Part shown: piece after piece, positions 13,310 through 52,627 of the stretch
How positions within the stretch are numbered: position 1 is the stretch's first letter
Layout: every line of letters starts with the position of its first letter
Assembly: GCF_011386835.1 (NCBI RefSeq)
Contig: NC_088815.1
Span: forward strand, 10,478,001 to 10,542,000
Direction of reading: 5' to 3'
Source: Chrysemys picta bellii
Lineage: Eukaryota
DNA: 64,000 nt
Position numbers and translations under genes: made by a program
Notes under the pieces: model-generated
Told to the model about the DNA's origin: nothing
Seen by the model: the letters and a program-made list of their open reading frames with translations, nothing else
Database searches by the model: none

Positions 13310-13510
13310 AATAATCCCTAGCTCTTACATAGCACTTTGTACAGGTGAATCTCAACAAGGGAAGTTAATGTCATTATCCTCAGTTTACAGATGGGGAAAC
13401 TGAGGCACCGGGAGGTGACGTGACTCGCCCAATAGGCGAGTGGTAGAGCTGGAACTAGAACCGAGGTGCCCTGAGCCCCAGTCCAGTGTCCTAGCCACTA
13501 GGCTACACTG
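13310..13510 (-). mobile_element. CORE/MIR-like SINE. Similar copies at about 1-70, 1630-1745, 6040-6215, 10850-10985, 19395-19520, 24990-25180, 37556-37665, 42420-42565, 44860-45050, 45500-45605, 49690-49870, 50330-50460, 60740-60840
   Basis: Recurrent TTACAGATGGGGAAACTGAGGCAC / GTGCCTCAGTTTCCCC core with a GAACCCAGGAGTCCTG tRNA-like head. Confidence 0.7.
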
Positions 13511-14736: not shown

Positions 14737-14993
14737 GGCTACATCTACACTGCAGTAAGAGATCCGTGGCATGGCCGCGGCTGGGCCGGGTCAGCTGACG
14801 CGGGCTGCAGGGCTAAAAGTCGCAGTGTCAATGTTCAGGCTCGGACGTCGAAACCCCACGAGGGGGGAAGGTCTCCGAGTCTGGGAGCCAGCCCATGCAG
14901 GAACCTCTACGCTACAATTTTTAGCCCTGCACCTGAGCCGGCTGACCCAGGCCCTGAGTGCCATGAGTGTTTTATTGCAGTGTAGACATACTC
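14737..14993. mobile_element. PIF/Harbinger-type MITE in gene A intron 3
   Basis: TIRs GGCTACATCTACACTGCA / TGCAGTGTAGACATACTC; flanks TAA / TTA. Confidence 0.7.
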
Positions 14994-27588: not shown

Positions 27589-30169
27589 ATGGAGCGGCCC
27601 CAGTGTCTCTTGCTCCTGCTCTCCCTGCTGTCCTACCCCTCGGCCCATGCTGGTGAGTAAAGGAAGCCATGGGTGAGGGTGACTCTCCGGGGTCCATGCA
27701 CCAGGTGAGGAAGGAGCCATTCCTTCTCCTCCTATTCAGGAGACTGTGTCTTTTTCAGGTGCTTTGCGGAGTCAGATTGTCGGGGGGCATGAAGCCAAGC
27801 CCCACTCCAGGCCCTACATGGCAGCCCTGAAGATGTCGGGTGGTTTCAGCTGCGGGGGGTTTCTGGTGGCCCCGGACTGGGTGATGACCGCCGCTCACTG
27901 CATGGGGTAGGTACCGTCGCCGGGTTTGTCCTTCTCACGCTGGTTGACGGAATACCTTTTAAAGCAGGAGTCGTCTGCAGTCCATGTGAAGCCAGCTGTC
28001 TCTGCACCCTCGCCCCCATTGCTCGGGGAAGGGGAGAGGGGCTGTGTCAGGGAAAGTGACCCACGCTGTCTCCTCCCGGTTTCAGGGATATCACCGTGAT
28101 CCTGGGAGCTCACAACATCCATGAGCCAGAGGAGTCGCAGCAGGTGCTGGGGGTTGAGACATACTACAAACACCCTGAATACAACAGCATCTTCATAACG
28201 AACGACATCCTGCTGCTAAAGGTAAGTGACTTGTCTGCAGCAGGGGAGGTCCCCCCGACAGCTGCTATGGGGGGCGAGGGGCTAAGTGCGGGTGGCTGAG
28301 AACAGAGAGAGAATTTTACACCTTGTGCTGTGGGGAGAAGTCAAAGTTCACTTTGCAAACTGGGCTTTATTATTTCGAGATGGTCCAGCCAGAGAAAGGA
28401 AACCCTGGGCAGATCCTGCAGCCTCAACCTTCCTGGAGTTCCCTGGGGGTCAGGGACACTCGGAATAGATCCCCCAGGGTCAGCCACACTGTCCCACACC
28501 CCCTGCAAGCTGCATGTTCTCCAGTATTGCCTCCTCCTGTCCCCTAGGTTGCTCAGTGTAAGTGCTCAGGGCCCGTTGCTGTAGGTTGCTGAGTCCCTCC
28601 CATCACCTGGCCAGGTAGGCCACTGGACATCTTCCTGAGCCATTCTCACCGCGGGCCCCCTGCCTCCAGATGCCATTGACTGCTGCTTGGGGCTTAATAC
28701 TCCTCCTCTTCCTCCCACCCAGCTGACAGCGAAGGCCAAGCTGACTAAATACGTCCAGGTCATCCCCCTGCCCAAGACCAGCAGCGACGTCCCCACCGAC
28801 ACCAAGTGCAGCACCGCGGGATGGGGCCTCATTGACAAAGAGAGGATCACCGACAAGCTCTTTGAGACCAACATCACCATCTACAGCCGCAGGAAATGCC
28901 TCAACCTCTACCCCAACCTCAACGACGGCATGCTCTGCGCCGGCAGCTTCCACCAGCTCAAGGACTCCAGCCAGGTCAGTACTGGGAACGCCGGCCAACA
29001 GGTGGAACGGGGACGTGTAAGCACCAGGGCTGGGACTCCCAGGGCAAGCTACTTAGGTTCCACTCTAAGAGGAGGGACGCTCATGGATGCAAATCTCCTG
29101 CCAGCTCATGTGTCTCCCATAAGGGTTTCCCCCGTGTGGTTTCTTGCTACCCAGGCTGACGCAAGCCCTGCATTCAGCTCCTGAAGGAGGGTTTGCTGCT
29201 GAGCCCGGAGATCTGTGGAAGCACACGGCCCAGCACCGATGGATTCCTTAGTAAGTCCCATCTACACAAGACCTGGGCAAAAAGTTTCAACCCCTCCCCC
29301 CCCTTTTTTTTTTGGCAAAAACATGCAGATTTAGTTCAACCAAAACATTGCACCAAGTTGTGTTCAATTCACCCAATGGTTTCGGTGAAAAAACCCCAAC
29401 TCCCTCCGTCCCCACCCCCATAGCTGAACCAAATTGAAACACGTTGGTTTGACCTTTTCCAAACAGAACGTTCTGATTTTTCGATTCGAAACACCTCTCC
29501 CTTTGGAAACCTCCCTCCCCTTGAAAACGCTCCACGCCCCAAGGAAATGTTTCATTTCACCGAGACCCTTTTTTCCTTGCTGCTGTTTGGAACTGGCACG
29601 AGATGAAAACTCCATTATTAGCCCAGCTCTAGGGCAGACCTCTTCGGACCGTGTGTCTCTGCCGCGGGCACAGGGGGCAATCACCACTGATGTACATGTA
29701 GCCGAGCTGGCTTTAATGTAGCTGACGCGGGTACCACAGCATGGGCCAGACCTGGGAGTGCTTACCCAGGGTTCTGGATGGGTTCGTACATCCTACGCTG
29801 CTCCAGCTTCACTGCTCCAGTAATGCTCGCTCGGGAACATCAGTCATGAGCCGCAGTCACACCCAGTAATTGCAGTGCCTGGGACATGGGGCGACCCCAT
29901 TGGGTTTGTGCAGAACAGCCAACTGAACAGGTTGACCCCTGGGGTAAGTGCATGGAAGTCATTCAAGTTACGCTAGGGATTAAGTTGGCCCCATATCTGG
30001 AGGGCCTCTGAAGTCTCTCCTCTTCTCTGTTTGGCAGGGAGATTCCGGGGGGCCTCTGGTCTGCAATGGGGTGGTGCAGGGAATTGTCTCCTTTGGCTAC
30101 AGCGCCCCTCCTGCTGTCTACACCCGCATTGCTAACTACCTTCCGTGGATCAAAACGATCATGGGCTAG
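27589..30169 (+). CDS. Granule serine protease gene B, intact, 243 aa preproenzyme (cathepsin G-like/mast cell protease-like). Exons 27589-27652, 27759-27906, 28086-28221, 28723-28974, 30038-30169
   Basis: Signal peptide [21 protein letters not shown], propeptide [23 protein letters not shown]57 (TAAHC), D102 (NDILLLK), S195 (KDSSQ|GDSGG); all introns GT-AG with phases 1,2,0,0. Confidence 0.93.
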
Positions 30170-33100: not shown

Positions 33101-33300
33101 GGGGGTATGCTGATAGAATTCCTCTGGTTACCAGCCCTGGGGAGCATCCCCCTGGGGAGGGGACCCATTGTCGGCTGACACCGATTCCCGGTCTCTTCAA
33201 AGGCTCAAGATGGATCTGGAGACTAGCAGATAGAGAAAAGAGGTTGGGATAAATAACCTGAGTTTAAACTGACTCAGGGCCTCCTCCCTGATCCAGCAAA

Positions 33301-33413
33301 TCATAGAATCATAGAATCTCAGGTTGGAAGGGACCTCAGGAGGTCATCTAGTCCAACCCCCTGCTCAAAGCAGGACCAATCCCCAACTAAATCATCCCAG
33401 CCAGGGCTTTGTC
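33301..33413 (-). mobile_element. CR1 3' tail; another CR1 fragment at about 32800-33060
   Basis: TCATAGAATCATAGAATC...GGTTGGAAGGGACCTCAGG (reverse complement of the CR1 tail). Confidence 0.85.
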
Positions 33414-34286
33414 CTTAAATGGACAGGACGCCTGGTGCCCGGAGTGCCCCAGTCCTAAGGGAACGACTGGAAGGACTTTGGCCTACTGAGTGGGTTGTCA
33501 TTCTGAGCAAAGGATTTGATGAACTTGAAACCACAGGAAAGGCCCCGGGGGGGGGCGTTGGGAGGATGGCTTCTGCCAGAGCCAATGTTGGGGGCGGGGG
33601 CAGGGGGAATCTCCAGTCATGCATGGTAGGTTCATTTATGGGTTTGGGTGTGTTTTCCCTGCAGTACTTTTATCTGAAGAATAAACTCGGCTTGCTTAGA
33701 AAGGCCTAGCTGGTGACTTCTAGCTGCAGCAATGACAGGGTGTCCTGGTGGTGACCTGACTGGCCTTGAGGGCAGAAACAAAGCAGGTCTGCTTAGATAT
33801 TTCAGGCAAAAGGCAGGCTAACACGGTGAAGGCAGGGAGCTTTGCAACCCGGAAATACCCTGGTCAGAAGGGCGAGAGAGACACGTGTCTCCCACCCAAG
33901 AGAGGCGAAGACCTGAGCATGGGTGCCCTGCCTGGAGCCCAGAGGGGGAGTCCAGGTGCAGCCGCCCTGAACTGTGATCTGGCACCACTTGGAGGAAATT
34001 GCTACATGAGGGCGGCAAAGAATTATTTTCCATGAAATTGATTCCTCCCCCAGGAACCTACAACTCAAAGCTAAAATGCCCCGTGCAGAGGGTGCCACTT
34101 TAGCCTTCAGAAGAGGTCCTGGGTGGGCTCTGACTGAGACACCAGGCTTGTGCTGGCTCCGTACGGAGGGAGCTTTACCCTGACCACAATAACCATGCTG
34201 CTGAGAGATGCACTTTGTAGCTAGTGCTCCAGGGCTGTGCATGAGCAAACTGATTCTACGTCGATTAGTCAGATGAGCCCAAACCC

Positions 34287-34331
34287 TGTGGTTTTCTAGG
34301 TGCTGAATCTCACGGGTCTCAGCTTATAAAA
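34287..34331 (+). promoter_or_regulatory. Gene C core promoter: RUNX site TGTGGTT (34287-34293) and TATAAAA (34325-34331)
   Basis: Seen directly; spacing identical to gene B. Confidence 0.7.
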
Positions 34332-34405
34332 CCAGTCAGGGAGCTGACGGAGACCCTAACTGCAGCCCAGGCTGGAAGGGGATTGGCGAAGCGGAGAACT
34401 CCAAG

Positions 34406-37400
34406 ATGAGACAGGCCTGCAGCCTCTTAATCCTGCTCGCTCTGCTGTCCCCCACTTCCGCCCATGCTGGTTAGTAGAGAAAGCCAGGGGGTCGGACGAC
34501 CACCTGGGGTCCATGCACCAGGTGAGGCGAGAACAGACCAATCACATCATCAGGAGCGTCTCTCTTTCAGGAGCTTCATGGAGTGAGATTGTGGGGGGGC
34601 ATGAAGCCAAGCCCCACTCCAGACCCTATATGGCCTATCTGAAGAGGACCACCTTGGATTTCTGCGGGGGATTTCTGGTGGACCCAGGCTGGGTGATGAC
34701 GGCTGCTCACTGCAGGGGGTAAGATTTTGTTTGGTATTTGTACAGCACCTGACGCAAGGGGCTCCTGATCAATGCCAGGCACTCCCACAGAACAAATAAT
34801 AAATACCTCTCTCAGGTTTAAACCTCACATGTACAGCAGATGAACCAAATAATTATGCACTGGTGGGGTAGCTGTAGTGGACCCAGGGTATTAGACAGAC
34901 AAAGTGGGGGAGGTAATATCTTTTATTGGACTGACGTCTGTTGGCGAGAGAGACAAGCTTTAGAGTCTCTTCGCCAATAAAAGATATTACCTCCCCCACC
35001 TTGTATCTAGAACCACAGAACGGATTTTTTGGTTCATTGGCCATTCCAAAAACATTGACAAAAATCATTTCGGGTCAATCTGAATGATTTTTTGAAAGAA
35101 AATTTCAGTGACTCAAAAAAAAAAAAGGAGAGGGGTGTCAAACAAAACATTTTGATGTTGAGAGGTATTTTCAGGTGTTTGCATTTTGTGATAAAAGTGA
35201 AAGAAAGCTCTAAATGTCATTTTGACCTTCCCCCCAAAATTTAAAAAAAAAAAGTGTTTTAACATTTTCGAACTGAAGAACACTGACTTTTTCAGACTTT
35301 TGTTGGCCAAAACAATTCACTGAAATGGACGCAAATTTGCAAAAATCTTTCAGTGTTGCCAAATCAACCTTGTTTGGGGGGAGTGGGGGAAGAAAACGCA
35401 AAACCAAACCAATCAGAAACCTTCTGTCCGAAACATTTTGCTCAGCTCTACTGTAGAGCATCATCCTTCAAAAGCTTGTCACCCATCTCTGCCCTCCTCT
35501 AATTCCATCACATTAGGAGCAGAGTGGACCCGGGGGGGGCGGTCCCACTTTGACTTACAGAGCTGGGAGTGGCAGGGAGATTCTCTCCGGTGGGAAATCA
35601 CCAGGCCAAGGAAGAATTAGAGGAAGAATTTGCCTTTTCATCTGGTTTTATCTGAAAACGCTTTCTAGTGCTTAACTCCAGAATTATTAAAGTATTTATA
35701 ACTATTGATTCATAGCTCCTAAGGCCAGAAGGGACCACTGTGATCATCTAGTCTGAGCTCCTGTATGGCACAGGCCCGAGAACTGCCCCCAAAATAATCC
35801 CTAGAACAGATCTGTTTGAAGTAGATGTAAAAGTTGTCTGTGAAGGAGAATCCCCCTCCCACCCCCACACTAGGTAAATTGTTCCAGTGGTTAATTACTC
35901 TCACTGTGAAAAAAATATTCCTTGTTTCCAGTCTGAATGTGTCTAGCTTCACCTTCCAGCCACTGGATTGTGTTGGTCCTTTCCCTGCTAGACTGATCAA
36001 CTCACCCCTTAACCTTCTCTGGGTCGAGCTAAATAGATGGAGCTCCTTGAGTCGATCACTCTCAGGCAGGTTTTCTAATCCTTTAATCATTCCCGTGGCT
36101 CTTCTCTGAACCCTCTCCAATTTATCAACACCCTTCTGCAATTCTGGGCACAAGAACTGAATACAGGATTCCAGCAGCGGCCGCACCAGTGCCAAATTCA
36201 GAGGTAAAATAACCCCGTGTGGCAAATTGCCGGCACTACTATGATGGGTCCCGCGCTTTCTCTTCTTGTGGGGGTGTTCAGGGCGCCATTTCTCACCCCT
36301 GATCTGGGGTATTAACTGTCCCACTAGTATCCCAGAGAAGGGGAGTGGAGAGGGAGGGACCCGGGCCCACCCCGTACTCCGGGTCCCAGCCCAGGGGCCC
36401 TAGGGATAGCAGCAAACCACTTGAACTAGCGATTCCTTCCCCTGGGCTACTTCCCTCTCCGGCCCTTCAGCTTGTGGGGCTTCCTGCCCTCTCCCTGCTT
36501 GGGCAAGGTTTCCCTCAACCCTTTGTGTCTGTGGAGGCCCTCTGCTTTGTACAAGCCGGGTTTCCCTTTACCTAGGGTCTTGGTCTTCTGGCCCCGCCAC
36601 AGCACTTCTCCAAACTCTCCTCTGCTTCCCTCCAAACCACTCCGCTTCGACTCCTTCCACTGGCTGATTGAAGCAGGGCGTTTTTATCAGGTGACTGGCT
36701 TCAGGTGCTCTAATTGGCTTAATTGGCTTCAGGTGCGCTAATTAAACAGTAGCAGCCTATCTTCCCTCTACAGGGAATAAGGCTCTCATCATCCTGGGGT
36801 TTACGTATCTCCCATCGATCACTCTCCTGCTGCCCTCCGGCCATGATGTATCACACCCTGTACTCCCTACTCGAGAATCCCCTGTTTATGCAGCCTACGG
36901 TTGGTTGCATTAGCCCTTCTGGGCACAGATTGACTGGCAGCTCGTGCTCAGGTGATTATCCGCACTCCCCAATGTAGTCTTTTTCAGAGTCCCTGCTTCC
37001 CAGAATAGTGCTCCCCCATCCTGGAAGTATGGCCGACAGTCTTTGCTCCCAGATGGACACATTTACATTTAACCATATTAAAAACCACATTGGCTGCTTG
37101 CACCCAGTTTACCAGCCAACCTAGATCGCTCTGAATCAGCCACCTGTCCCTCCTGGTCCTTTACAACTCCCGCAATTCGTGTGCCGCCTGCAAACTTTAT
37201 CGGTGATCGTTTTATGCTGGCTGGGGCCAAGAACCGATCCCTGCGGGACTCCAGTGGAAACAGACCCCACTCGATGACCCGCCTCTATTGCTGCGGACAA
37301 ACACAGCACGGTTTCATTACATCAGCAGGCCAGGGTTTTACAAATGCTAATTAACCCTCAGATGAATACCCTTAACTCTCATGTATCAGAGGGGTAGCTG

Positions 37401-40400
37401 TGTTAGTCTGAATCTGTAAAAAGCAACAGAGGGTCCTGTGGCACCTTTAAGACTAACAGAAGTATTGGGAGCATAAGCTTTCGTGGGTAAGAACCTCACT
37501 TCTTCAGATGCAAGTCTTAAAGGTGCCACAGGACCCTCTGTTGCTTCTTAACTCTCACGTTACAGCCAGGGAAACTGAGGCACAGAAGGGCTGTGTGTGT
37601 CCAAAGCCACACAGTGAATCAGCAGCAGAGTCAGGAATAGAACCCAGGAGTCCTGATGCCCAAAGTTCCCCAAACTCCCAGACACAGGCCCGATTCTCAA
37701 GTGCATTCAGGACCCACTAGTTACTCTGGCAGTGTAAGGGGAACATGTGCTCACTTTAAGGGCAATCAGCTCACAGCTGTTCATTATCTATAAATCCCTA
37801 GGCTGGGTAATAGGTTTTCTTTGCCTTACGGCTGTAGCATCTTTTCTTGGCAGCTAGCGGGTGGGTGTCAGGACCAGCTACCACATGGTTACAGAGCAGG
37901 CCAGAGTGGTTTGAGCATTGGCCTGCTAAACCCAGGGTTGTGAGCTCAATCTTTGAGGGGGCCATTTAGGGAACTTAGGTAAAAATCTGTCTGGGGATTA
38001 GTCCTGCTTTGAGCAGGGGGTTGGACTAGATGATCTCCTGAGGTCCCTTCCAACCCTGAGATTCTATGAATAAATAAAAGGAAAATCGATTGATTGCTTT
38101 CGCCAATTTCAGGAACCTGACAGTCACCTTAGGAGCTCACAATATCCACAGGCACGAGAACTCCCAGCAAACGTTTGCGGTTCAAAGCTATCACCCGCAC
38201 CCCGCCTACAAAGAACGTCCTAGAGTCAATGACATCCTTTTGCTGAAGGTAACCGATTTCTTGGGCTAATATTCACTTCCAGGTTCATACCTCTGGGCAC
38301 CATGTGAGGTTTGGCGCTTGGCCGTGGTCAGGGGTAATTTATGCCAAAGGGTAGCTAAAGACACAATGTGCAGAGCTGGCTCTGCCCTTTCCCCAGAGTT
38401 TAGATCAGGGGTGCCAGTGTAGGTCCATCATCTGGGTTCTGATGTTGGGATGGAGGGCACAGACCCCACCCTGCAGAGCATGACTTGGATGAAGATTTGT
38501 ATTGTGGTAGTACCTAGCGGCCCAAGACACGGCCCACGACCCAGTTGCACTAGGCCCAGTACAAAAACAGAACAAAAAGATAGGCCCTGCCCCAAAGAGC
38601 TTTGTCTAAACAAGAGACAGATGGACGGGGGAGTACAAGGAAACAAAGGAGACGGTATTTAATCGGTTAGCACGCTGGACACTGGTCACAGCAGCTGCCT
38701 ACTGATTGTCAAGGTTTGTGTCAGCATCATGCCAAAGGAGAGTTTGAGGAGGTGTTGGAAGGGGAACGAGGTGGCTTTGGGGATGTTTATGGGGAGCTCC
38801 TCCCACGCGAGAGGGGCAGCAGGGGAGAGAACACAAAGGGGCTTATGTGAGAGCATAACAAATGGGTGATGGAGGCTGGTCTCATGGGTGGTCGGAGGCG
38901 GGAGTCAAGCTCTTGACTGCATGAGCGAGGACAGGGCGTTGGGTGGGAACAGGCCAGGAGGGGCCTGGAAAGTAGTTGGGTTTGATGCGATGGAGAACGG
39001 AGGGGCAGCTGAGGTAGAATGGCTCCCTTAGAAACATGCAGGTGACCGAGCCTTTGTTGGGCGATATTTAAAAACATGAACACATTTCTGGATCTCCCCC
39101 ACTCCAGCTGAAGGGGAAAGCCAAACTAAACAAATACGTCCGTGTCATTGACCTGCCCAAGGCCAACAGAAATGTCGCCCCACGGAGCCAGTGCAGCACC
39201 GCTGGGTGGGGTTTTATCGACCAGGGAAAAACCACCGACAAGCTCTTTGAGACCAACGTCATCATCCGGCCACCAAAGGAATGCCGCTCTTTGAACCCCG
39301 GGATAACTAACGGCATAATCTGTGCAGCGAGCAAACAGTGGGTCAAGGACTGCAGCCAGGTCAGTAGCAGCCGCGTCTAGGGGAGGATGGCAGAGGAGGC
39401 AGGCCAGAGGGCTACCAGAGGGTGGTAGCCTAACCTTGGGAGATCTTGTTCTGTAAATTATCTGGGTTACTATCGCTAGTTTAAAAACAACATTCTGGCC
39501 AGGACAGGTGCCTGTCCCTTTGTCTTGGTTATTTTGTCTCTCCTACCAACTTCTGTTCTCCTCCTCTGTGTCTCTGTAACCTCTTCTTCCGTAGGTCCCT
39601 CTCCGTTTCTTCCTGGCCCTGCCGACGTCAGCTGAAAAGCCGCTCCAGAAACTTGTCGCCAGGCCTGTGTTGTATCCTGAGCCTGGTTCCCCCTGGACTT
39701 GACCCTCATGGGGTCACTTGCACTTGTACTGAGTGGGCCAAAGACACTCCTGTTCCTATGGGTACCCACTTTGCGCAGGTGGAAGCAAAGATGACCCCAG
39801 GGGGAATCATAGAAAAGCAGGGCTGGAAGGACCTTGAGAGATCATCTATCCAGCCCCCTGCACTGAGGCAGGACCAAGTAAATGCAGACCATTCCCAACA
39901 GGTGTTTGTCCCACCTGTTCTTAAACACCCCCAATGCTAGGGATTCCACAGCCTCCCTTTGCAATCTGTTCCAGTACTTAGCCATCCTTAGAGTGCAAAG
40001 TTTTTCCTAATATAGAATCAAAATCTCATGTGTTGCAGTAATAAGCCCATTACTTCTTGTCCTATCTTCAGTGGACTTGGAGAACAATTGATCACCATCC
40101 TCTGTATAACAACCGTCAACATATTTGTTGACTTATGTCCCCCTCCCTCCCCCCGCCCCAGTCTTCATTTCCCAAGACTAACCATGCCCAGCTGTTTCAA
40201 CCTTTCCTCATAGATCAAATTTTCTAAACCTTTTATCACTTTTGTTGCTCTCCTCTTGACTCTCCAATTTGTCCACGTCTGTCCTAACATGTGGCACCCA
40301 GAACTGGACACTGAGACCTCATCTGCCAAGTAGACCGGGACGCTTATCTCCCACGTCTTACATATAATACTCCTGTTAATATACCCCAGAATAATAGTCG

Positions 40401-41958
40401 CTTTTTTTGCAACTGCAACACATTGCTGGCTCATATTCAATTTGTGATCCACCATAAACCCCAGCTCCCTTTCAGCAGTACTGCCGCCTAGCCAGTTATT
40501 CCCCATTGTGCAGTTATGCCGTTGATTTCTACTTCCTAAGTGAAGTCCTTTGTCTTTATTACGTTGAATCGTGTTGACTTCAGACCAGTTCTCCAATTTA
40601 TCAAGATTATTTTGAATTCTAATGTTCTGCAAAGTGTTGCAAGCACTCCCAGCTTGGTGTCATCTGCAAATTTTATAAACATCCTCTCCACTCCAAGTCA
40701 TTAATGAAACTCTTGAATAGTGAAAGACCCCACTAGATACTAGTTTGTTTATAAGAACATCACGTGGGACTGTGTCAAAAGCCTTACTAAAATCAAGATC
40801 TCACCTCTACTGCTTCCCCACATCCACTAGGCCAGTAACTTCATCAAAGAAGGAAATTTGGTTGGTTTGACATGATTTCTTCTTTCCAAATTCATGGTGG
40901 CTAATACTTATAATTTAACTGCTTACAAACTAATTAATAGTTTGTTCTAGTGTCTTTCCTGGTATAGAAGTTAGGCTGACTGGTCTACAATTCCCCACGT
41001 CCTCTTTGTTCCCCTTTTTAAAGAGAGGTACTATCATAGAATATGAGGGTTGGAAGGAACCTCAGGAGGTCACCTAGTCCAACCCCCTACTCAAAGCAGG
41101 ACCCGTCTCCCAGACAGATTTTTGCCCCAGATCCCTAAATGGCCCCCTCAAGGATTGAACTCATAACCCTGGGTTTAGCAGGCCAATGCTCAAACCACTG
41201 AGCTATTGCTCTTCTCCTGTCCTCTAGGACCTCACCCACCTGCCATAAGTTTTCAATGATAATTGCTTCAACTAGTTCCTTAAGAACCCAATCGTGAATT
41301 TTGTCAGGCCCTGCCAATTTTAATACATCTAACTTATCTAAATAGTTTTTAACCCGGTCTTTCCCTTTTCTGGCTTGTGTTCCTTCCCCCTTGTTGTTAA
41401 TATTAATTGTGCTAAGTATCTGGCCACAATTAACCTTTTTAATGTAGACTGAAGTAAAGTAGTGTGGCAGAGCTCCAACCTTGTCTCAGTGGGTCCCGCA
41501 CTTCCTGGCGGATTTCGCTAGCCTCAGAGGTGATCAATTGTTCTCCAAGTCCACTGCAGATAGGTATATGATCACGTCATTGACTAGAGGTGAAATCTTG
41601 ACCCCATTTCAATCAATGGGAGCTGTACTGTTGATTTCAATGGGGCCAAATTGTCAGCTTGTGTTGCAGCGTGCACATGCTAGAGGACAGAGTTAAGGTG
41701 ATAGAGGTTATCTTAAGTTCGGCATTTCCTAGCCTTTGCAGCCGTTCCATTCTTTTTAAATGTAGTGGTTTTTTGTATGGAAAATATATAGTGAATGTTT
41801 GTGCACATCTTCCTTGTGTTTCTCAGGGGGATGACGGTGGCCCTCTAGTCTGCGAAGGGACAGCACAAGGAATCTTCTCCTATGATTTCAAAGTCCCTCC
41901 TGGCTTTTACACTCGCATTGCCTCCTACCTTCCCTGGATTGAGACAACCATGCAGTAA
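34406..41958 (+). CDS. Serine protease homolog gene C, intact 243 aa ORF but catalytic Ser195 replaced by Asp (predicted pseudoprotease). Exons 34406-34469, 34571-34718, 38113-38248, 39108-39359, 41827-41958
   Basis: [36 protein letters not shown] and NDILLLK are intact; exon 5 begins GGG GAT GAC GGT GGC (GDDGG); all introns GT-AG; AATAAA at 42143-42148. Confidence 0.9.
35706..37220 (-). mobile_element. CR1 LINE fragment in gene C intron 2, split by a solo LTR
   Basis: [12 protein letters not shown]...[18 protein letters not shown] remnant (ORF 35719-36324); CR1 sequence resumes after 36855. Confidence 0.8.
36218..36855. mobile_element. Solo LTR, 638 bp
   Basis: TGTGGC...ATCACA ends; 5-bp TSD CCCCG / CCCTG. 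Confidence 0.75.
37385..37546. mobile_element. Penelope-like insertion with terminal inversion; hammerhead motif on the minus strand (37471-37511)
   Basis: 14-bp TSD CTTAACTCTCA(T/C)GT (37371-37384, 37547-37560); minus strand GCAT-CTGAAGA-A-GTGAGG...CCCAC-GAA-AGCT-T-ATGC. Confidence 0.75.
37900..38069 (+). mobile_element. Tortoise-type Pol III SINE (tRNA-derived head plus CR1 3' tail)
   Basis: AGTGGTTTGAGCATTGGCCTGCTAAACCCAGGGTTGTGAGCTCAATC head and GGTCCCTTCCAACCCTGAGATTCTATGA tail. Confidence 0.8.
39805..41460 (-). mobile_element. CR1 LINE fragment in gene C intron 4, with a nested Pol III SINE at 41034-41205
   Basis: [12 protein letters not shown]...KLNMSQQC...AKKA-like remnant (ORF 40165-40632); SINE head and tail in reverse orientation. 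Confidence 0.8.
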
Positions 41959-42142
41959 GAAACAGGAGAGGAAGAGGCTGAACCTTCTCCTGCATCATCG
42001 GCTGCCTTTGAAAGTTGGGCGTTTCCTTGTGCTGTATTTGGTGGCTTTTTCCCCCTCCCTTTTCTGGGGTGCTGAGTGGCAAGTTAGGGCTAAGACAAGA
42101 AGTGGTCCCGATGGGGAGTCCCCCTTGTCCTCGTCACAAAAA

Positions 42143-42148
42143 AATAAA
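42143..42148 (+). terminator. Polyadenylation signal of gene C
   Basis: AATAAA about 185 nt after the stop codon. Confidence 0.55.
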
Positions 42149-43260
42149 TCCCTCTAGACGTACAAACATCTACACACAATGCTACGGCTGTAGCCTACAT
42201 CCCACTGGGAAGGTGCCTCGATGAGCCCTTGCTGATTCCATCTGTGGCATCTATATTGGGAGCGCTAAGGGAGACATGGTTGCCCGGGGCCATCAGCATT
42301 CTTAATCCCAGGGGCCTGATTCTCCCCTGTCCTGCACCTGCTCTCCAAGGTACTTTTGACCCTCATGACTATGGCATCTGAGTGCCTCTCACTCTGTGTT
42401 TATTCTCAACCCCCCGGCAGATGGGGCAGTGCTATTATCCCCATTCTACAGAAGGGGAATTGAGCACAGAGAGGTTAAAAGTCTTGCCCAAGGTCACGCA
42501 GCTGGAGCAAGGACTTGACCCCCCAGTCTCTCAAATGCTAGGCCCATGACTTTACCACTGAGCCATCCATCCTGCCTGCCATTACTTGACTACCACTTTG
42601 GGCTGGTGTCAATGACCCCACAAGGTGCAGGGCATGGGAGACAATAGGGCCTCCCCCACGTAAGCCAGCTCTGAGCAGATCTACATGACAAAGGTTAAAT
42701 GAGCGCCAGGGGCTTGTCTACACTAGTGCTCCCAGTGGAGCAGCTGCAGGGGTAGTTGCAATATATGTGGGGGGTGGGGAATATTAGCATAGAGGACCAG
42801 ACCAGTGGGTATAAGGGAGTCTAACTTCCACCATCATGCACATTTCTGAATTTGGGCCAATGCTCCCAATTCTGGCAGGAGCTTCTGTCCCTCCCCAGCG
42901 AGCCAGGATTAACGCCTGCACCCATGTGTAGCCCCTGCTCTAATCGCTGCTTCATTCCTGCCTTGTTGCTGCGTTACCGGATTGTCCCGAGCATGAAAAA
43001 TAAACTCTCCGCTGCGTTTCAGAGTCCTTCTCTGGTCCGAGTCTCATTGCCTGGGGGTTTCCGGACATTGCTCGGCGAACGTGAGACGAAGCGATTAGTT
43101 CCAGACCCGGGAATCGCTCGGAGTCTCATTCACAGCTAGAAAGTTTGGGGCTTAGTTTACACGACAAAATTTGGCCAGCAGCTGTAAATGGACTAGGAGC
43201 ATGAAAAGAATGACACCGCCAACGGGCAGCAAGGCTGGCAAAATGGTGGAGATGTAACTA

Positions 43261-47152: not shown

Positions 47153-50100
47153 TCACAGCAGGTTGATCTCGTCCAAATAGCCGACCAAGACCACATCCCT
47201 GACGTCCTTGAAAACCTTGCGGATGTTCTGCGTATCCGTGGCACAGGTGTAGTGGCGGTAGAGGCACCTGGATTTGGAGGCCATCATGGAGGGTCTCTGC
47301 CCTGCGTCGCAGTGGACAGCGGAGCATCGCTTGTAGGTGTCCACGTACATCTCCAGAATGAACTTCTTCGCCGCCTCCGCATCTCGCTTGGGTCCTGACG
47401 TGGAACAAGAACAGACCTCAGCAGGGCTTTGCCACTGAAAGCCAGGCCGGCTCTGTCACACCGGGCAGAACGGGAAGTCACGGTAGTGGCGATCACGGCA
47501 TTCTCTGCACGAGTGACTGTGGACGGGGCATTCCCCATTCGGTCTATGGCAACAAAACCTTGATTATTCATTTTAAGCCAGCGCCGGGCAACCCCAGGCA
47601 AAGAGCAGCATCGCATTGGGCTAGTTGCTGTGCCAATAAACACACAGCCTGTGCCCCCGAGAGCTTACAGAGCCGTCCCTGGTTGGGAACCCTCCCCCCC
47701 ACACACAGAGTTAGTGAGAGAGGTTTACGTGTTACCTGTGGGAGCCTAGGCTATTCTGGACCAGAGCAAGGGCAGAGAATACACACAGGGTCATTCCCCG
47801 CCCCGCCCTGCCCCGCCCCATTTCTCTGCATGCCAAGAAAGCAAGTAACCCAGTAACAAAGCAGAGAATGGCATGATGGTGCAGGGAGCATTCTCCGCGA
47901 TGGCTTGAGTGCGGGAGGAGCACTGGGGAGATGTTTGCTTGTGACTCTTTCCGTAACAGACAGCGGGGGCGATCTGCTCCAGAGCTGCTCTCTGCGGGCA
48001 CGGGCGCTGCTTCCGGAGAGCCCCCAAGCGTCGGTCTTCATGCAGCAGGGTTTGGCGGGAGTTACCTGGGAAGCTAGGGAAGTAGGCAGCCAGGTCCGAG
48101 TGGGTGATCTTGTCCTCCAGGAGGTCGGTTTTGTTGAGGAAGAGGATCACGGAGGCGCTCTGGAACCAGGGCAGTTCCAGGATGGTTCTGAACAGGGCCA
48201 GGCTCTCCCTCATCCGATTCTGCACCCGGGGGGTGGGAGACAAAGACAACACCCATCAGCCCCCCTTCCTCAGCCCCCTTCACTCCCAGAATGCCCGGTG
48301 TGAGTCAGAGAGGACTCAGACAAGGAACACAGCAGCCCAGATGCAGGGAGGGAGCCAGACATCTGAGCAGAGAGCGGAGCCCCTCCAGACCTGCTTGCTA
48401 GTGAGATATATACGCCCAGGTCTTGTGGCAGGGAAGGGCCTGGCTCATCTCCTTAGGGCTCCTTACCTCCTCGCTATTCTCCTCCAGGCACTGGTCGTAC
48501 TCGCTGAGGGAAGCCAGGTAGATCAGGGCAATAACGTTTTCGAAACAGTGTATCCACTTCTTGCGCTCCGACTTCTGCCCACCCACATCCACAATCCTAC
48601 AGGGAGCCGGGAGGACAGGGCCGTTAGCGGGTGGAGCTGCCTTTGAGAGGGATTTACTCCTAGTATGCAGCATTTCCAGGACTCCCTTTGCCCCCAGAAG
48701 GGTGCAGCACCAGCGGCAAGCAGCCAGCTGTGGGGTGGAGGATAGCAATTCCACAGCACCCAGCAACACCCGGGGTGGGATTCACCTGCCCGAAGCTGGA
48801 GGGGGGTAGGAGACATGACTGTGAGGAAGGCAGACTAGAGATACCTGCTGGGCTCTTTGTCCTGGGCTATCAGGTTCTGTTACCACCCAGCCTGATTGGA
48901 ACCAGGAGCTCCTAACCTAGCTGTCTACACGACACTCCACTCGCATGTAGAGGACGTGGCCTGTACTGAATCTGGGCAGAAACAGCAGCAAAGACAAGGT
49001 GGGGAATCCCATGCACTCCCACTGCTCTGCAGTAGCTTCACCTTAAGATCATCTCCTGCATGGAGAAGCAGTATTCACTGATGCCGGTCGTCGGCATGCG
49101 GCTCCTCAGGACATCCTGAGCTGTGGGGATGTAACTGTCCTCTGCGATACGCTCCAGGCTGGACAGAAAACTGCAAAACAGCCATGAAACGAGGAGGAAG
49201 TCAGTCCCTTTGGCACCTCATGCGAGAGGATCTCAAAGCGCTTTACAGAACACGCAGCCCTACAGTAAGCCAGTGATCGTGTCCCCGGTTCCGCAGATGG
49301 GAGGGGAAGCTAAGCCAGACGTGAAGAGAGGCAGTGCAGGGAAGAGAACGCCCAAGTCCTGACTCCCAGCCCTGTGCTCGAACCACACAACCGTTACCCC
49401 TTCCTATTAAGGCATAACCCGCTGGGCGGAGCTTGCGGCAGCCTGGAGCCATTTATCACTGATGGGCAAACCCCAGAGAACGTCAGTTCAGAGAAGACAC
49501 CTGGGAGGTTTCTGCATCTGGTTGGACTCAGGAGACTTACGATTCGTTGCTACTTCAGGCCATGGACCAAGCACAAAACCAAAAATGTGTTTAAATATTT
49601 AAAGGAAAATTTAAAATACCCATTCAAATATAATGGGGTTTATTGTGTGTATTACTGCAGCATCCAGAGCGCCCAGCAGACACTGAGATCCTGTTGTGCA
49701 AGGTGCTGTACATACACATCGTAAGAGGCAGCCTCTGCCCTGACTCTCTTACAGGCTAAAAGAGACAGGCTAGGTGGAAGAGGAGACAGGCACAGAGAGG
49801 GGAAGTAACTTGCTCAAGGTCATAGAGCAGGTCAGGCTGAGAATAACCCAGGTCACCGGACTCCCAGCTCAGTGCCCTCCGCAGCGGGTCACACCGCCTC
49901 TTCCAGCAAACCCCTTTTCGTCCCGGAAACCTCGACCGCTAGGCAAATTGAAACCCTGGGAAAGCTGTTTGACGTGCCACCCAGCAGGGGGCAGCCGTGG
50001 TCTCACGCGCCCGTTACAGCCTGCAGGGGTGACTCACTATGGGGCCGAGTCCAGTAAGTGATACTCCCGCCGTCTCTCGTAGCAGGTCCGGATCCCCGCG

Positions 50101-52627
50101 TCCCTCCATAGGCTTTCAATGGCGTTTGCGTACGGCCTGATCAAGGCCGCCACCTTCGAAGCGTTCACCCCCATGACCAGCTTGGCGTTTTCCTAGAAGC
50201 AGGAGAAATGGGGGTGGGGGTGGGGGGGTTACATAAAGAAGGAGCAGCTGCCTTCTTGGAAACTTCCTGAAGAAAATTCTCTCCCCTCCCTGCAAGGACA
50301 AATCCAAACAGCGCAGGCCTGGGGGTTATATGAAGAGAGGGAGCACGGCCTAGTGCACTGAGCATGAGACAAGGGGCTAGGACTCCTGGGTTCTAGTCAG
50401 GACCCTGCCTCTGATTCGCTGTCTAGCCCTAGCCACGTAACCTAGGGCTCGGTTTTCCATCCACACGCACAGCCCGCATTACTGTAGGATCTGAGCAACT
50501 CCCCATCCTTAATGCATGTATCCTCACCGGCCCCCTGGGCGGGAGGGCAGTGCTACTATTCCCATTTCACAAAAGGGAAACTGAGGCACGGGTTTCAGAG
50601 TAGCAGCCATGTTAGTCTGTATCCGCAAAAAGAAAGCTTATGCTCTAATAAATTTGTTAGTCTCTAAGGTGCCACAAGTACTCCTGTTCTTTTTGAGGCA
50701 CGGGGCGGCCTGCTCCGGGTCACACAGGAAGTAGGAAAATTCTTTACTAGTCTCCTCAGCCTTGGGGGGGGAGGGGAGCATGCACCTCTTTTCCCTGGAC
50801 AAGGAGCCATTGGCTCCTGCCGTGGAGCGAACAGGGGCCGCTCGCTCAACCTCCAGCTCTTGACAGACCAGCTCTGGAATACGCTGGCCTGTTGCGACAC
50901 CTCCCTTTGCTTTGCACCGACGGCCCTTGGCTCTCCTGTGCGGACTGGCGGGGCTCCTCCTTGGACAAAGAGGGGGGTGTTGCTGCATTCTAGTAGGCTC
51001 CAGCCTTCCAGGCAGGTGGGGCTCAGATCCTCAGCTGGTGTCAACCAGCACCGCTCCATTATCTGCAATGGTGCTATGTCGGTTTATACCCAGGGAGCGC
51101 GTCTGGCTCGGGGCATCCCGCTGCCTCCACTCCCCATCCGGGGCAACTGCCGGCAGGGGTCTCCCTGTCTGGCCCGCCCGCCCTCTGAACTTACCACATT
51201 CTCTGGCTGGGCATAAGGGATCTGCAAAGTCTCCATGGCTCCGATCATGGCCTGCATGGAGGCGAAGACGTTCTGATACACCAGCGTGGCAAAGCCTTTG
51301 CGATCCTCTTCTGAATAGCCCGCCCCGTGGATTATCCGCAGCTGTTTGATGAACGTGCTCTTCCCGCTTTCCCCAGCGCCTGTTGGCCTCAGACAGGAGA
51401 GAGACCTTAGACTTCCTCGGGGAGATGGGGTCATGAACCTAGTGGGGAACCTGAGGCTCGTCCACCATCGAGAGTCAAGGGGCAGGTATTTCATAGCCCA
51501 CAGACTGTTTGACCATAGGAGGTTGCGACAGGAAATGGACAAGGATTGCAGGGCTTCTGAAGCCTGAGCTCTCCTGCCAGCCCTGGAGACGCCTGGAGAC
51601 TTCAGATTCTGGGACTGTCGGGCCAATTCTTCCTTTCTCCGGCACTGAAGGGCACACCAGCGGGGAATGCCAGCCAGCTCTGTCCTATTACACAAGGGAT
51701 CTGAGACCAAGGCTGGTTCCATAGGCTGGAAGGGGCCTCCTGGCCACCAGTCCAGTCCCCTGCTAATCCCAGGTCACCCCATCATAGAATCTCATTCATA
51801 GACTCATCAAGCTCCGTCTTCAAGCTAGTTCGGTTGTTTGCCCCCATTACTCCCCTCGGGAGGCTGTTCTAGAAGCTTCCTCCCCCGATGGTTAGAAACC
51901 TCCTTCTCATCTCCAGACTATGTTGATTCATGGCCAGTTTACCCCATTTGTCCTTTGGCTAATATTCTCCTTTAGCTTAAATACCTCCCTGGCTTTTACA
52001 CACACACACCCCTGCCCCCTGATGTATTTAGGGAGAGCAATCCAATCCCCGCTCAGCCTTTGTTTTGCTGGTTAAACAAGCCAAGCTCTCTTAATCTCCT
52101 CTCATAAAACAGGCCGTCCAGTCCCCTGACCATCCTGGTAGCCCTTCTCTGAACCTGTTCCAGTTTGAAATCCTCTTTCTTGAACAGCAGGGACTGGTGA
52201 AGGCCGTATGCTCCTCTTGGAGCAAGCCCGGTAATCATCTGCAACAATTCTCCCATATGACAGCAAAAGCAGTTTCTGCAATGCAGGCCTGACGAGGGTT
52301 GGAGAGCAGGAGTGAAGGAAACCTTTGGACAACAGAGATTTGGGGGAGACCCATCTTCCTTCCTCCCCTTTGGCTAAAATGCATAAATCCCTCATTATGG
52401 CTCTGCTCCCCTCCCCCACGTTCTCCACCAAACGGTCATCCAGTGTAAACAAAGCTGTGTGGGCCACAGAGTAACTCACCTAGTAGAAGTAACTTCAGCT
52501 CCATCCTGTCTCGCTTTTTCTGGTCTCTTAGTATTTTGTTGATTTCTTTATCTAACACAACAGCAGCTTTATCTTCTTCCGACAGGAAATAGGGGCACTT
52601 CCGACAACAGCAGAAGCACCAAGCCAT
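47153..52627 (-). CDS. GNA15: G protein alpha-15 (Gq family, G15/G16), 380 aa. Exons 52627-52480, 51379-51195, 50192-50038, 49170-49042, 48596-48467, 48219-48066, 47394-47153
   Basis: [44 protein letters not shown] and C-terminal YLDEINLL; internal exon sizes 185/155/129/130/154 typical of Gq family; all introns GT-AG; adjacent to S1PR4 as in human. Confidence 0.95.
50593..50693. mobile_element. Penelope-like short inverted insertion inside a CORE SINE
   Basis: 11-bp TSD TGAGGCACGGG (50582-50592, 50694-50704). Confidence 0.75.
51780..52180 (-). mobile_element. CR1 fragment in GNA15 intron 1
   Basis: [16 protein letters not shown] remnant and ATCATAGAAT tail. Confidence 0.75.

What the first reader, a model, noticed from the sequence alone, without database searches (positions are those of the whole stretch)
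41827..41841. Gene C is an intact, apparently maintained Ser195Asp pseudoprotease
The nucleophile codon (41833-41835) is GAC where both paralogs have TCC, a two-nucleotide change unlikely to be a read error. The TATA and RUNX sites, ATG, signal peptide, IVGG/Asp194 activation switch, His57, Asp102, six structural cysteines, all splice sites and a poly(A) signal are intact across 7.5 kb whose introns have gained many TEs. This suggests selection for a non-catalytic protein. It parallels mammalian azurocidin but arises in a different subfamily by a different substitution. I know of no description of it in reptiles.
Basis: partly seen in the sequence, partly recalled or inferred. Interest (0 to 1): 0.9.

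Follow-up and report, generated by a model that had tools for sequence, protein, structure and literature searches.

The report
Ancient dead granzyme-like protease of sauropsids
Gene C is an intact, spliced, transcribed granzyme/cathepsin-G-like gene that lacks the catalytic serine, and it belongs to an apparently undescribed lineage of dead proteases kept next to a G-alpha gene in turtles, an alligator and birds.

Summary
Codon 41833-41835 is GAC inside GDDGGP, and gene C (34406-41958, + strand) is an intact 5-exon, 243-aa gene. Its protein is identical to NCBI 'granzyme G-like' of Chrysemys picta bellii. Spliced exon 3-4-5 contigs from three RNA-like runs (two species labels) join at the predicted junctions. 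Two of them demonstrably carry GAC.

All 13 turtle orthologs lack Ser195: Ala in softshells, Asp in most others, Gly in two tortoises. The syntenic alligator gene has Glu195 and Tyr57. About 94 avian orthologs have Ala, Thr or Val at 195, and most have Gln57. Codons link by single steps: TCT, GCT, GAT, then GGT or GAC.

dN/dS is not low. It is 0.72 overall and about 1.25 within Testudinoidea, against about 0.3 for the active paralog B. Neutral decay is still excluded. A simulation gives about 5e-5 for six intact ORFs from substitutions alone, and about 1e-8 once indels are added. Exons 4-5 show omega 1.8 (p=0.012).

An olive ridley sea turtle has deleted exons 1-2. No paper found describes the inactivity.

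Best reading: a secreted, cationic, non-catalytic binding protein whose dead substrate cleft keeps evolving. This is a new member of a known kind.

The parts
34287..34292 (+). RUNX-type TGTGGT site in the gene C proximal promoter
   Evidence: Read. Conserved in six gene C orthologs and in paralog B, but changed in decaying paralog A. Function is inferred from the consensus only.
34325..34331 (+). TATAAAA box about 75 nt upstream of the ATG
   Evidence: Invariant in all aligned orthologs. The -200..-1 region diverges 6-7.5% within Testudinoidea, against 10-11% for -600..-201 and for introns.
34406..34469 (+). Exon 1 CDS: start codon and signal peptide ([21 protein letters not shown]..), phase 1, donor GTTAGT
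   Evidence: The same unusual donor is present in all six genomic orthologs.
34571..34718 (+). Exon 2: pro-peptide GASWSE, the IVGG N-terminus (34588-34599) and His57 (CAC, 34708-34710)
   Evidence: IVGG is invariant in 13 turtles. His57 is kept in 12 of 13, with Arg in Pelodiscus.
38113..38248 (+). Exon 3: conserved NLT glycosylation sequon and Asp102 (GAC, 38231-38233)
   Evidence: Spliced to exon 4 in RNA-like contigs of X15, X18 and X25 (joint 38246>39106, GT..AG).
39108..39359 (+). Exon 4: Cys136, Cys168, Cys182, then Asp189 (39348-50) and the unpaired Cys190 (TGC, 39351-53)
   Evidence: Cys190 is present in all Durocryptodira and is Ser in the softshells.
41827..41958 (+). Exon 5: GDDGGP with Asp at the nucleophile position (GAC, 41833-41835), Cys201, Asp216, Gly226 and stop TAA
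42143..42148 (+). AATAAA poly(A) signal
   Evidence: The RNA-like contig of X25 ends at 42168, about 20 nt downstream. This is weak evidence, because contig ends are unreliable.
27589..30169 (+). Paralog B: the intact, Ser195-bearing neighbour used as the active control
   Evidence: Omega is 0.28-0.32.
47231..51773 (-). G-alpha gene, GNA15-like by its C-terminus ..DEINLL, which marks the locus
   Evidence: Motifs and Pfam G-alpha. The same neighbour lies beside gene C in six turtles, and a G-alpha gene lies in the same place in a passerine.

Best explanation
Gene C encodes a secreted or granule-stored protein of the granzyme/cathepsin G/chymase ('graspase') fold that can no longer cleave peptide bonds. 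It is kept for a binding function.

Shown:
- The gene is intact, transcribed and correctly spliced.
- The nucleophile is absent from every ortholog examined: Ala, Asp or Gly in 13 turtles, Glu in the alligator, and Ala, Thr or Val in about 94 birds.
- His57 is additionally lost in Pelodiscus, the alligator and nearly all birds.
- The turtle, alligator and bird genes form one clade, and they share their position beside a B-like protease gene and a G-alpha gene.
- ORFs and splice sites are retained far beyond the neutral expectation.
- Amino-acid change is concentrated in particular segments, while the core is invariant.

Inferred:
- The serine was lost once, as TCT to GCT (Ala), in the stem of turtles plus archosaurs, more than roughly 250 Myr ago by established divergence dates. 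Asp, Gly and Glu are later single-step changes.
- In turtles the protein is still processed like a granzyme: signal peptide, then a six-residue pro-piece that could be removed as three dipeptides. It then adopts the 'active' conformation through the invariant Ile16-Asp194 switch.
- It uses its remodelled cleft as a recognition surface for a fast-evolving ligand. That cleft has Asp189, Cys190, Asp or Gly at 195, and Asp216, and sits on a body of +7 to +13 net charge.

My split for the ligand type:
- Microbial or anionic surfaces, as with azurocidin: about 40%.
- Decoy or trap for protease inhibitors, or for the substrates of paralog B: about 25%.
- Other: the remainder.
For: Sequence and gene model.
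Expression and splicing: (X15, X18 and X25 contigs join exons 3-4-5). The Pelodiscus ortholog lies as an uninterrupted ORF on a 1205-nt contig of a public sequencing run.
Orthologs and site 195. Alligator. Birds.
Synteny.
Phylogeny: C clade 98/93*, robust when birds (97/82*) or the alligator (100/95*) are removed. A turtle-only clade is rejected with AU p=0.035.
Selection:
- Omega is 0.72 over 8 taxa (p=0.0055 against 1), versus 0.28-0.32 for paralog B.
- Within Testudinoidea, exons 4-5 have omega 1.78 (p=0.012) and exon 5 has 3.2 (p=0.013).
- The neutral simulation gives P of about 5e-5 from substitutions and about 1e-8 with indels.
- Every coding gap in the ortholog alignments is a whole number of codons.
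- 104 of 243 sites are invariant and 53 have three or more changes, with dispersion 1.8.
Promoter is less diverged than neutral DNA.
Fold is intact: AF2 pLDDT 83.8, TM 0.82-0.84 to duodenase, granzyme H and cathepsin G.
Charge: +10 for gene C against +1 for paralog B.
Against: - Mean dN equals the intron rate within Testudinoidea, and omega there does not differ from 1.
- The omega above 1 signal rests on 43-127 codons, six taxa and a partition chosen by exon. It is not corrected for multiple tests, and no site model was run.
- The gene has lost exons 1-2 in Lepidochelys. It was not found within 10 kb of paralog B in the pleurodire Emydura.
- Pelodiscus is not cationic (-2), so charge cannot be the universal mechanism.
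- The alligator exon 1/2 junction could not be modelled, so that copy may be defective.
- The orthologs were found through annotated proteins, which favours intact copies.
- The runs are only guessed to be RNA, although spliced contigs argue for RNA.
- No protein, cell type, ligand or activity data exist.
- Long branches could inflate support for the C clade, although synteny is independent evidence.
Confidence: 0.72

Rival explanations
1. Gene C is a young or slowly decaying pseudogene that only looks intact because turtle genomes evolve slowly. The transcripts are noise.
For: Omega is about 1 within Testudinoidea. dN matches intron divergence. The neighbouring paralog A really is decaying. 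Exons 1-2 are deleted in a sea turtle.
Against: - With intron-calibrated branch lengths, six Testudinoidea ORFs with start codon and splice sites all stay intact in 1 of 20,000 neutral simulations. About 8 frameshifting indels are expected and none is seen.
- Thirteen turtle species, an alligator (exons 2-5) and about 94 bird clusters keep open frames.
- Substitutions are strongly over-dispersed, with long invariant blocks.
- The promoter is conserved.
- Correctly spliced transcripts occur in three runs.
Confidence: 0.04
2. The protein is still an enzyme that uses a non-canonical nucleophile or general base next to His57 and Asp102. Candidates are Asp195 activating water, or the new Cys190.
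For: In most turtles His57, Asp102, Gly193, Asp194 and the Ile16 N-terminus are all kept. Cys190 appears together with Asp/Gly195 in Durocryptodira.
Against: - Position 195 is Ala, Asp, Gly or Glu among orthologs, and Ala, Thr or Val in birds, so no chemistry at that site is conserved.
- Cys190 is absent from softshells, the alligator and birds.
- His57 is lost in Pelodiscus, the alligator and birds.
- By established S1 geometry, residue 190 lines the S1 pocket and does not face the scissile bond.
Confidence: 0.06
3. The GAC codon is an assembly or sequencing artefact, or a private allele of the sequenced animal.
For: None found.
Against: Contigs from runs of two other species labels show no difference at 41833-35. 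The independent NCBI protein is identical. Emys, Mauremys, Gopherus evgoodei and Chelydra also have Asp there.
Confidence: 0.01
4. The turtle, alligator and bird pseudoproteases are not orthologs. Each lineage killed a duplicate of its own B-like gene independently, and the clade is a long-branch artefact.
For: The alligator and bird branches are long, at 0.97 and 0.84. The AU rejection of a turtle-only clade is marginal, p=0.035. The residues at 57 and 195 differ between lineages.
Against: - The clade survives removal of either long-branch group.
- The order GPCR(-), B-like(+), C-like(+), G-alpha(-) is the same in the painted turtle and a passerine, and the B-like to C-like order is the same in the alligator.
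- The lineages share derived motifs that are absent from B-like genes: GIFSY, PGFYT and SW-IVGG.
Confidence: 0.12

Closest known systems
Azurocidin / CAP37 / heparin-binding protein (mammalian neutrophil granules)
   Same: It is a hematopoietic S1-fold protein that lost catalysis yet is kept as a granule protein. It is cationic and works by binding. (Its properties are from established knowledge; PMC4646688 calls it enzymatically inactive.) Gene C is likewise cationic, at +10 against +1 for its active paralog.
   Different: Azurocidin lies in the met-ase locus beside elastase and PR3, lost both His57 and Ser195 (to Ser and Gly), and is restricted to some placental mammals (PMC4646688). Gene C lies in the sauropsid G-alpha-flanked locus and keeps His57 and Asp102 in most turtles. 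Its best solved relatives are duodenase, cathepsin G and granzymes H and B, not azurocidin. Its lineage spans turtles, an alligator and birds.
Graspases: granzyme B/H, cathepsin G, chymase, duodenase
   Same: Same five-exon gene with introns in phases 1-2-0-0, the PHSRPYMA motif, three disulfides without Cys191-Cys220, and an IVGG N-terminus. E-values are 1e-54 to 1e-48 and TM is 0.82-0.84.
   Different: Those are active proteases of the mammalian chymase locus. Gene C lacks the nucleophile and belongs to the 'additional locus' that mammals lost (PMC8537139).
Genes listed as 'GzmG-like' (chicken) and 'GzmE' (Chinese alligator) in the GNA11/NCLN-bordered locus (Akula et al. 2021, PMC8537139)
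   Same: Same locus and probably the same orthologous gene. NCBI names for the avian orthologs are 'granzyme G/E/F-like', and the painted-turtle protein is named 'granzyme G-like'.
   Different: That paper counts them as serine protease genes and does not mention missing catalytic residues: a search for 'inactive' and 'catalytic triad' gives 0 hits. I did not verify that their named genes are exactly the sequences analysed here.
Other S1 non-peptidase homologues (haptoglobin, HGF/MSP, protein Z, insect clip-domain SPHs)
   Same: They have the chymotrypsin fold with a substituted triad, and the former cleft or exosites are reused for binding (established knowledge).
   Different: They are unrelated subfamilies, mostly multi-domain plasma proteins. 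None is a granzyme-type single-domain leukocyte protein.

Membership tests
Peptidase family S1A (chymotrypsin fold), Pfam PF00089 | Full-length match to the trypsin domain and a double beta-barrel fold | tested here: met
   PF00089 scores E=5.9e-56 over residues 28-238. The AF2 model has pLDDT 83.8 and TM 0.82-0.84 to solved S1 proteases.
Peptidase family S1A, active members | Catalytic triad His57, Asp102, Ser195 | tested here: not met
   His57 and Asp102 are present, but position 195 is Asp (GAC, 41833-35). It should therefore be filed as a non-peptidase homologue, not as a protease.
Graspase group (granzyme B/H, cathepsin G, chymase, duodenase) | Five exons with intron phases 1-2-0-0, exon 5 starting at Gly193, no Cys191-Cys220 disulfide, and the PHSRPYMA motif | tested here: met
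   Exon model. The best sequence and fold matches are duodenase, cathepsin G and granzymes H and B.
Sauropsid/amphibian 'additional' protease locus bordered by GNA11 and NCLN (PMC8537139) | Tandem graspase-like genes lying next to a G-alpha gene of the GNA11/GNA15 pair | tested here: met
   A GNA15-like gene lies on the minus strand at 47.2-51.8 kb, and a 7tm_1 GPCR lies at 3.8-5.3 kb. A G-alpha gene is also the neighbour in six turtles and a passerine. NCLN itself is not in the window.
Azurocidin/HBP | Orthology to the met-ase-locus gene beside ELANE and PRTN3 | tested here: not met
   The locus is different. Azurocidin appears only at E of about 6e-4 for exon 4 and is not among the 60 best full-length PDB matches. 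Gene C is an analogue, not a member.
Expressed, selectively maintained pseudoenzyme (as opposed to a pseudogene) | Transcription with correct splicing | tested here: met
   Exon 3-4-5 joints are seen in contigs of three runs. A full ORF lies on a Pelodiscus contig of a public run. Protein-level evidence cannot be tested with these tools.
Expressed, selectively maintained pseudoenzyme (as opposed to a pseudogene) | Evolutionary constraint beyond neutrality | tested here: met
   ORF and splice retention has P of about 5e-5 to 1e-8 under neutrality. Omega is 0.72 over 8 taxa, p=0.0055. Rates differ strongly between sites. Mean omega within Testudinoidea is about 1, so the constraint is site-specific.

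The most novel reading that the evidence does not exclude
Turtles, crocodilians and birds share one granzyme-family pseudoprotease, more than roughly 250 Myr old. It lost Ser195 once, as Ala. In turtles it still depends on the zymogen-activation switch, and its dead substrate cleft is under recurrent positive selection. On this reading it is a previously unrecognised non-catalytic effector, or a decoy, in sauropsid cytotoxic or granulocyte granules. It would follow that the 'granzyme G/E-like' genes scored as cytotoxic proteases in avian and reptile transcriptomics are not proteases at all.
Probability: 0.5. Interest if true: 0.72.

Novelty: new member of a known kind. Interest (0 to 1): 0.62.

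Why it matters
Dead members of the S1 protease family that work by binding are a known kind; azurocidin and haptoglobin are examples. None has been described in the granzyme/cathepsin G/chymase group, or in the sauropsid-specific protease locus.

Here the dead copy turns out to be the rule in every turtle, alligator and bird ortholog examined. That has three consequences:
- It corrects automatic names such as 'granzyme G/E/H-like' and 'mast cell protease 1A-like', which are already read as cytotoxic proteases in chicken single-cell studies. PMC10067856 lists a 'granzyme G-like' gene among cytotoxic serine proteases, though its identity with this gene is unverified.
- It gives comparative immunology an independent second case of a leukocyte protease turned into a binding protein. 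This one carries natural variants at the dead site (Ala, Asp, Gly, Glu) and a natural knockout in a sea turtle.
- It is a caution for genome scans. Omega near 1 did not mean a pseudogene here.

Tried and rejected
- The exon 4 search of the 50%-identity representative library returned only distant or mis-modelled proteins. Its use was to provide P0005 (Chelydra) as a handle for the next search.
- No run is on record as RNA. Expression therefore rests on spliced contigs from runs only guessed to be RNA.
- Only exons 3-5 could be laid, because of the 6,000-letter limit. The exon 1-2 joint is not shown directly for this species.
- Not all differences of DNA run X12 are listed, so I do not claim the codon for organism D.
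- The look-up of bird protein P0312 failed. P0282 was used instead.
- Emydura: no gene C exons lie within 10 kb downstream of paralog B. This is inconclusive, since it could be a loss or a greater distance.
- Alligator: no canonical exon 1/2 acceptor in frame was found. I used exons 2-5 only, and did not decide whether that copy is functional.
- My first parse of the IQ-TREE codon output captured no omega. I redid it from the log.
- A third homology search for crocodilian copies was not run. B-like proteins would have filled the 120 listed rows.
- No site or branch-site codon model (PAML or HyPhy) was available.
- I did not run complex prediction, because no specific partner is claimed.
- The idea of a His57, Asp195, Cys190 metal site was considered and dropped, because Gly195 tortoises and Ser190 softshells lack it.
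Full report
**Observation**

The window carries three tandem, + strand, five-exon genes of the granzyme/cathepsin G/chymase type:
- Gene A, 12814-16626.
- Gene B, 27589-30169.
- Gene C, 34406-41958.

They lie between a rhodopsin-type GPCR ORF (3835-5349, minus strand) and a GNA15-like G-alpha gene (about 47.2-51.8 kb, minus strand, C-terminus DEINLL).

Gene C exon 5 starts at 41827 behind an AG acceptor and reads GGG GAT GAC GGT GGC CCT, which is GDDGGP. Genes A and B have GDSGGP with TCC.

The gene C model has exons 34406-34469, 34571-34718, 38113-38248, 39108-39359 and 41827-41958. It gives a 243-aa protein without stops. The protein has:
- a signal peptide and a GASWSE pro-piece;
- the IVGG N-terminus;
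- His57, Asp102 and Asp194;
- the six structural cysteines, plus an extra Cys at position 190.

Every intron is GT..AG. The exon 1 donor is the unusual GTTAGT. RUNX (34287-92), TATA (34325-31) and AATAAA (42143-48) sites are present. The protein is identical to NCBI XP_008167030.1, 'granzyme G-like' of Chrysemys picta bellii.

**Is the codon real, and is the gene expressed?**

I laid contigs of three small runs that are guessed to be RNA, plus one DNA run, on 38000-42200. The three RNA-like runs are X15 (species label B) and X18 and X25 (label F), from three studies.

In each of the three, a single contig covers 38112-38246, 39106-39356 and 41824 onward with contiguous record coordinates. That is exons 3, 4 and 5 joined at the predicted GT..AG junctions. 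The DNA run has the introns.

X15 shows no difference in 41824-41994. All three differences of X25 lie elsewhere. GAC is therefore present in transcripts of two further species labels. X18 has one difference in that piece that the table does not list, and not all differences of DNA run X12 are listed, so I do not claim the codon for either run.

The Pelodiscus ortholog lies as an uninterrupted ORF on a 1205-nt contig of a public sequencing run, which implies spliced mRNA there too.

**Orthologs in turtles**

A search seeded with a Chelydra fragment found gene C orthologs in 13 turtle species. None has Ser195.

| Lineage | Motif | Codon at 195 |
|---|---|---|
| Carettochelys | GDAGNP | GCT |
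| Pelodiscus | GDAGNP | GCA |
| Chelydra, five emydids, two geoemydids | GDDGGP | GAT, or GAC in the window (no DNA was checked for Chelydra, Pangshura and three emydids) |
| Gopherus evgoodei | GDDGDP | GAT |
| Gopherus flavomarginatus | GDGGDP | GGT |
| Chelonoidis | GDGGSP | GGT |
| Paralog B, all species | GDSGGP | TCC or TCT |

Asp itself is not conserved at this site.

Pelodiscus has also lost His57 (CGC, Arg). All seven genomic copies share the five exons, the intron phases and the odd GTTAGT donor. In six species the order is B-like gene, then gene C, then G-alpha on the opposite strand.

**Beyond turtles**

In Alligator mississippiensis, the gene directly downstream of the B-like gene has open exons 2-5. 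It reads TAAYC (His57 to Tyr) and GDEGNP (GAA, Ser195 to Glu). I could not model its exon 1/2 junction.

A fused song-sparrow gene model led to a large avian family named 'granzyme E/G/F-like'. Among 100 cluster representatives:
- 94 cover site 195. It is Ala in about 85, Thr in 6, Val in 3 and Ser in none.
- Position 57 is Gln in 89 and His in 2.
- The IVGG N-terminus is gone.

In the passerine Prinia the order is GPCR(-), B-like(+), C-like(+), G-alpha(-), the same as in the window.

In a 45-protein maximum-likelihood tree, turtle C, alligator C and bird C form a clade with support 98/93*. The clade persists when birds are removed (97/82*) or the alligator is removed (100/95*). Forcing all turtle genes into one clade is rejected, with AU p=0.035. 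An active Zootoca protein (GDSGGP) is sister to the clade with moderate support (91/92).

I infer one loss of the nucleophile, probably to Ala, before turtles and archosaurs split. Long branches are a caveat. Synteny is independent support.

**Is it under selection?**

Paralog B is clearly constrained, with omega 0.28-0.32 (p<1e-8 against 1). Gene C has:
- omega 0.72 over eight taxa (p=0.0055);
- omega 1.25, not different from 1, within Testudinoidea;
- a dN there that equals intron divergence, about 0.10-0.12.

Taken alone, that looks neutral. Five further results say it is not.

1. ORF retention. I took branch lengths from introns 1 and 3 (tree length 0.24 substitutions per site). A neutral simulation then left the start codon, reading frame and all eight splice dinucleotides intact in all six Testudinoidea in 1 of 20,000 runs.
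2. Indels. The intron-derived rate is 0.06 indels per substitution, 78% of them not multiples of 3. That predicts about 8 frameshifts where none is seen. Combined with the first result, P is about 1e-8. Every coding gap in the ortholog alignments is a whole number of codons.
3. Site heterogeneity. Over 13 species, 104 of 243 sites never change and 53 change three or more times (dispersion 1.8). The invariant blocks are [70 protein letters not shown] and PPGFYT. The hot spots are residues 102-110, 122-138, 152-155, 168-178, 190-194 and 220-223. By standard S1 anatomy and my anchor residues, I read most of these as the loops that frame the substrate cleft. That mapping is inferred, not measured on coordinates.
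4. Partitioned omega. Within Testudinoidea, exons 4-5 have omega 1.78 (p=0.012) and exon 5 alone has 3.2 (p=0.013). Exons 2-3 have 0.91, falling to 0.64 over eight taxa. This is moderate evidence only. The partitions are small and there is no multiple-test correction.
5. Promoter. The proximal 200 bp diverges 6-7.5%, against 10-11% for neutral DNA.

The best fit is a mixture of strong purifying selection on the scaffold and diversifying selection on the former cleft.

**Lineage losses**

In Lepidochelys olivacea, the segment matching window 32508-35065 is missing. That segment holds the promoter and exons 1-2. Exon 3 remains. In the pleurodire Emydura, no gene C exon lies within 10 kb downstream of gene B, which is inconclusive. 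The protein is therefore dispensable in at least one lineage.

**Fold and family**

Pfam Trypsin scores E=5.9e-56. The AF2 model has mean pLDDT 83.8. Foldseek and sequence searches put duodenase, cathepsin G, granzymes H and B and chymase on top, with TM 0.82-0.84 and E from 1e-54 to 1e-48. Azurocidin is far lower.

The mature turtle proteins carry +7 to +13 net charge, except Pelodiscus at -2. The window's paralog B carries +1.

**Mechanism**

Shown: there is no nucleophile in any ortholog, and His57 is lost three times. No conserved catalytic chemistry is therefore possible.

Inferred: in turtles, the invariant Ile16 N-terminus, Asp194, Gly193 and disulfides indicate that the protein still has to mature and snap into the protease-like 'active' conformation. 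It then presents a pre-formed but chemically dead cleft as a binding site. The six-residue pro-piece has an even length and could be removed two residues at a time, as in granzymes. That is inference from established DPPI biology.

Rapid change in the cleft loops suggests a fast-evolving partner. I favour microbial or anionic ligands, by analogy with azurocidin and with the catalysis-independent LPS binding reported for granzyme K (abstract of PMC5149580). A decoy for inhibitors or substrates of the neighbouring active protease comes second.

**Literature**

Akula et al. 2021 (PMC8537139) describe this GNA11/NCLN-bordered locus. They report it as present in birds, alligators, turtles and frogs and lost in mammals. 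They list 'CTSG-like and GzmG-like' in chicken and 'GzmM and GzmE' in the Chinese alligator, and they do not mention inactivity.

The 2015 survey (PMC4646688) names azurocidin as the inactive member and says it is restricted to some placental mammals. A chicken single-cell study lists a 'granzyme G-like' gene among cytotoxic serine proteases (PMC10067856). Whether that is the same gene is unverified.

Six full-text searches found no description of this pseudoprotease. Subscription journals are not covered.

**Verdict**

This is a new member of a known kind, the S1 pseudoproteases, but an old, widespread and mis-annotated one. Interest is moderate to high for comparative immunology.

Noticed in passing
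window 12814-16626 (gene A): Paralog A looks like the real pseudogene. Its start codon is ACG (12814-16). Its exon 2 acceptor is GG instead of AG (12976-77), its exon 2 donor is GTTAGC, and it has CRG in place of the conserved CGG. Its promoter RUNX site is changed. The NCBI Chrysemys model of it (P0010) skips exon 2 and reads GESSGP, which differs from the window's GDSGGP. The Lepidochelys copy reads GDSSGP. Pleurodire orthologs (P0164, P0184) are intact with GDSGGP.
   Followed up: partly
L009:20313-20346 (Lepidochelys olivacea), matching window 32508-35065: A deletion of about 2.5 kb removes the gene C promoter and exons 1-2 in this sea turtle. Exon 3 is still open. This is a natural knockout of the pseudoprotease.
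   Followed up: partly
L008:14756-20259 (Alligator mississippiensis): The alligator ortholog has His57 to Tyr and Ser195 to Glu. Its exon 1 and exon 2 cannot be joined by a canonical in-frame acceptor, but retaining intron 1 keeps the frame open (63 codons from the ATG to WIVGG). NCBI models only 206 aa.
   Followed up: partly
P0275-P0366 (avian 'granzyme E/G/F-like'), L011:10001-13499: The bird orthologs are fully dead. They have Gln57, Ala/Thr/Val195 and no IVGG N-terminus, yet they are kept as open frames in about 100 clusters. Two swift-lineage sequences (Hemiprocne, Chaetura) have His back at position 57.
   Followed up: partly
window 3835-5349 (- strand): A 505-codon open frame has a rhodopsin-family GPCR domain (7tm_1, E=8e-34). 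A GPCR gene sits in the same place and orientation in a passerine locus (L011:439-1665). From remembered human gene order near GNA15 it could be S1PR4-like, but this was not tested.
   Followed up: partly
window 39351-39353 and orthologs: An unpaired Cys at position 190, on the S1 pocket wall, is present in every Durocryptodira ortholog (those with Asp or Gly at 195). It is Ser in the softshells, which have Ala195. The two changes appeared on the same branch.
   Followed up: no
L005:23428-23619 (Chelonoidis abingdonii): The stop codon of the gene C ortholog is lost, which adds 20 residues (..KQTGEEEAEPSPASSAAFES) read from the former 3' UTR.
   Followed up: no
window 38000-38070 and 41100-41206: These intronic stretches have enormous contig depth in all four runs and many opposite-strand joints. 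They are high-copy interspersed repeats inside introns 2 and 4 of gene C.
   Followed up: no
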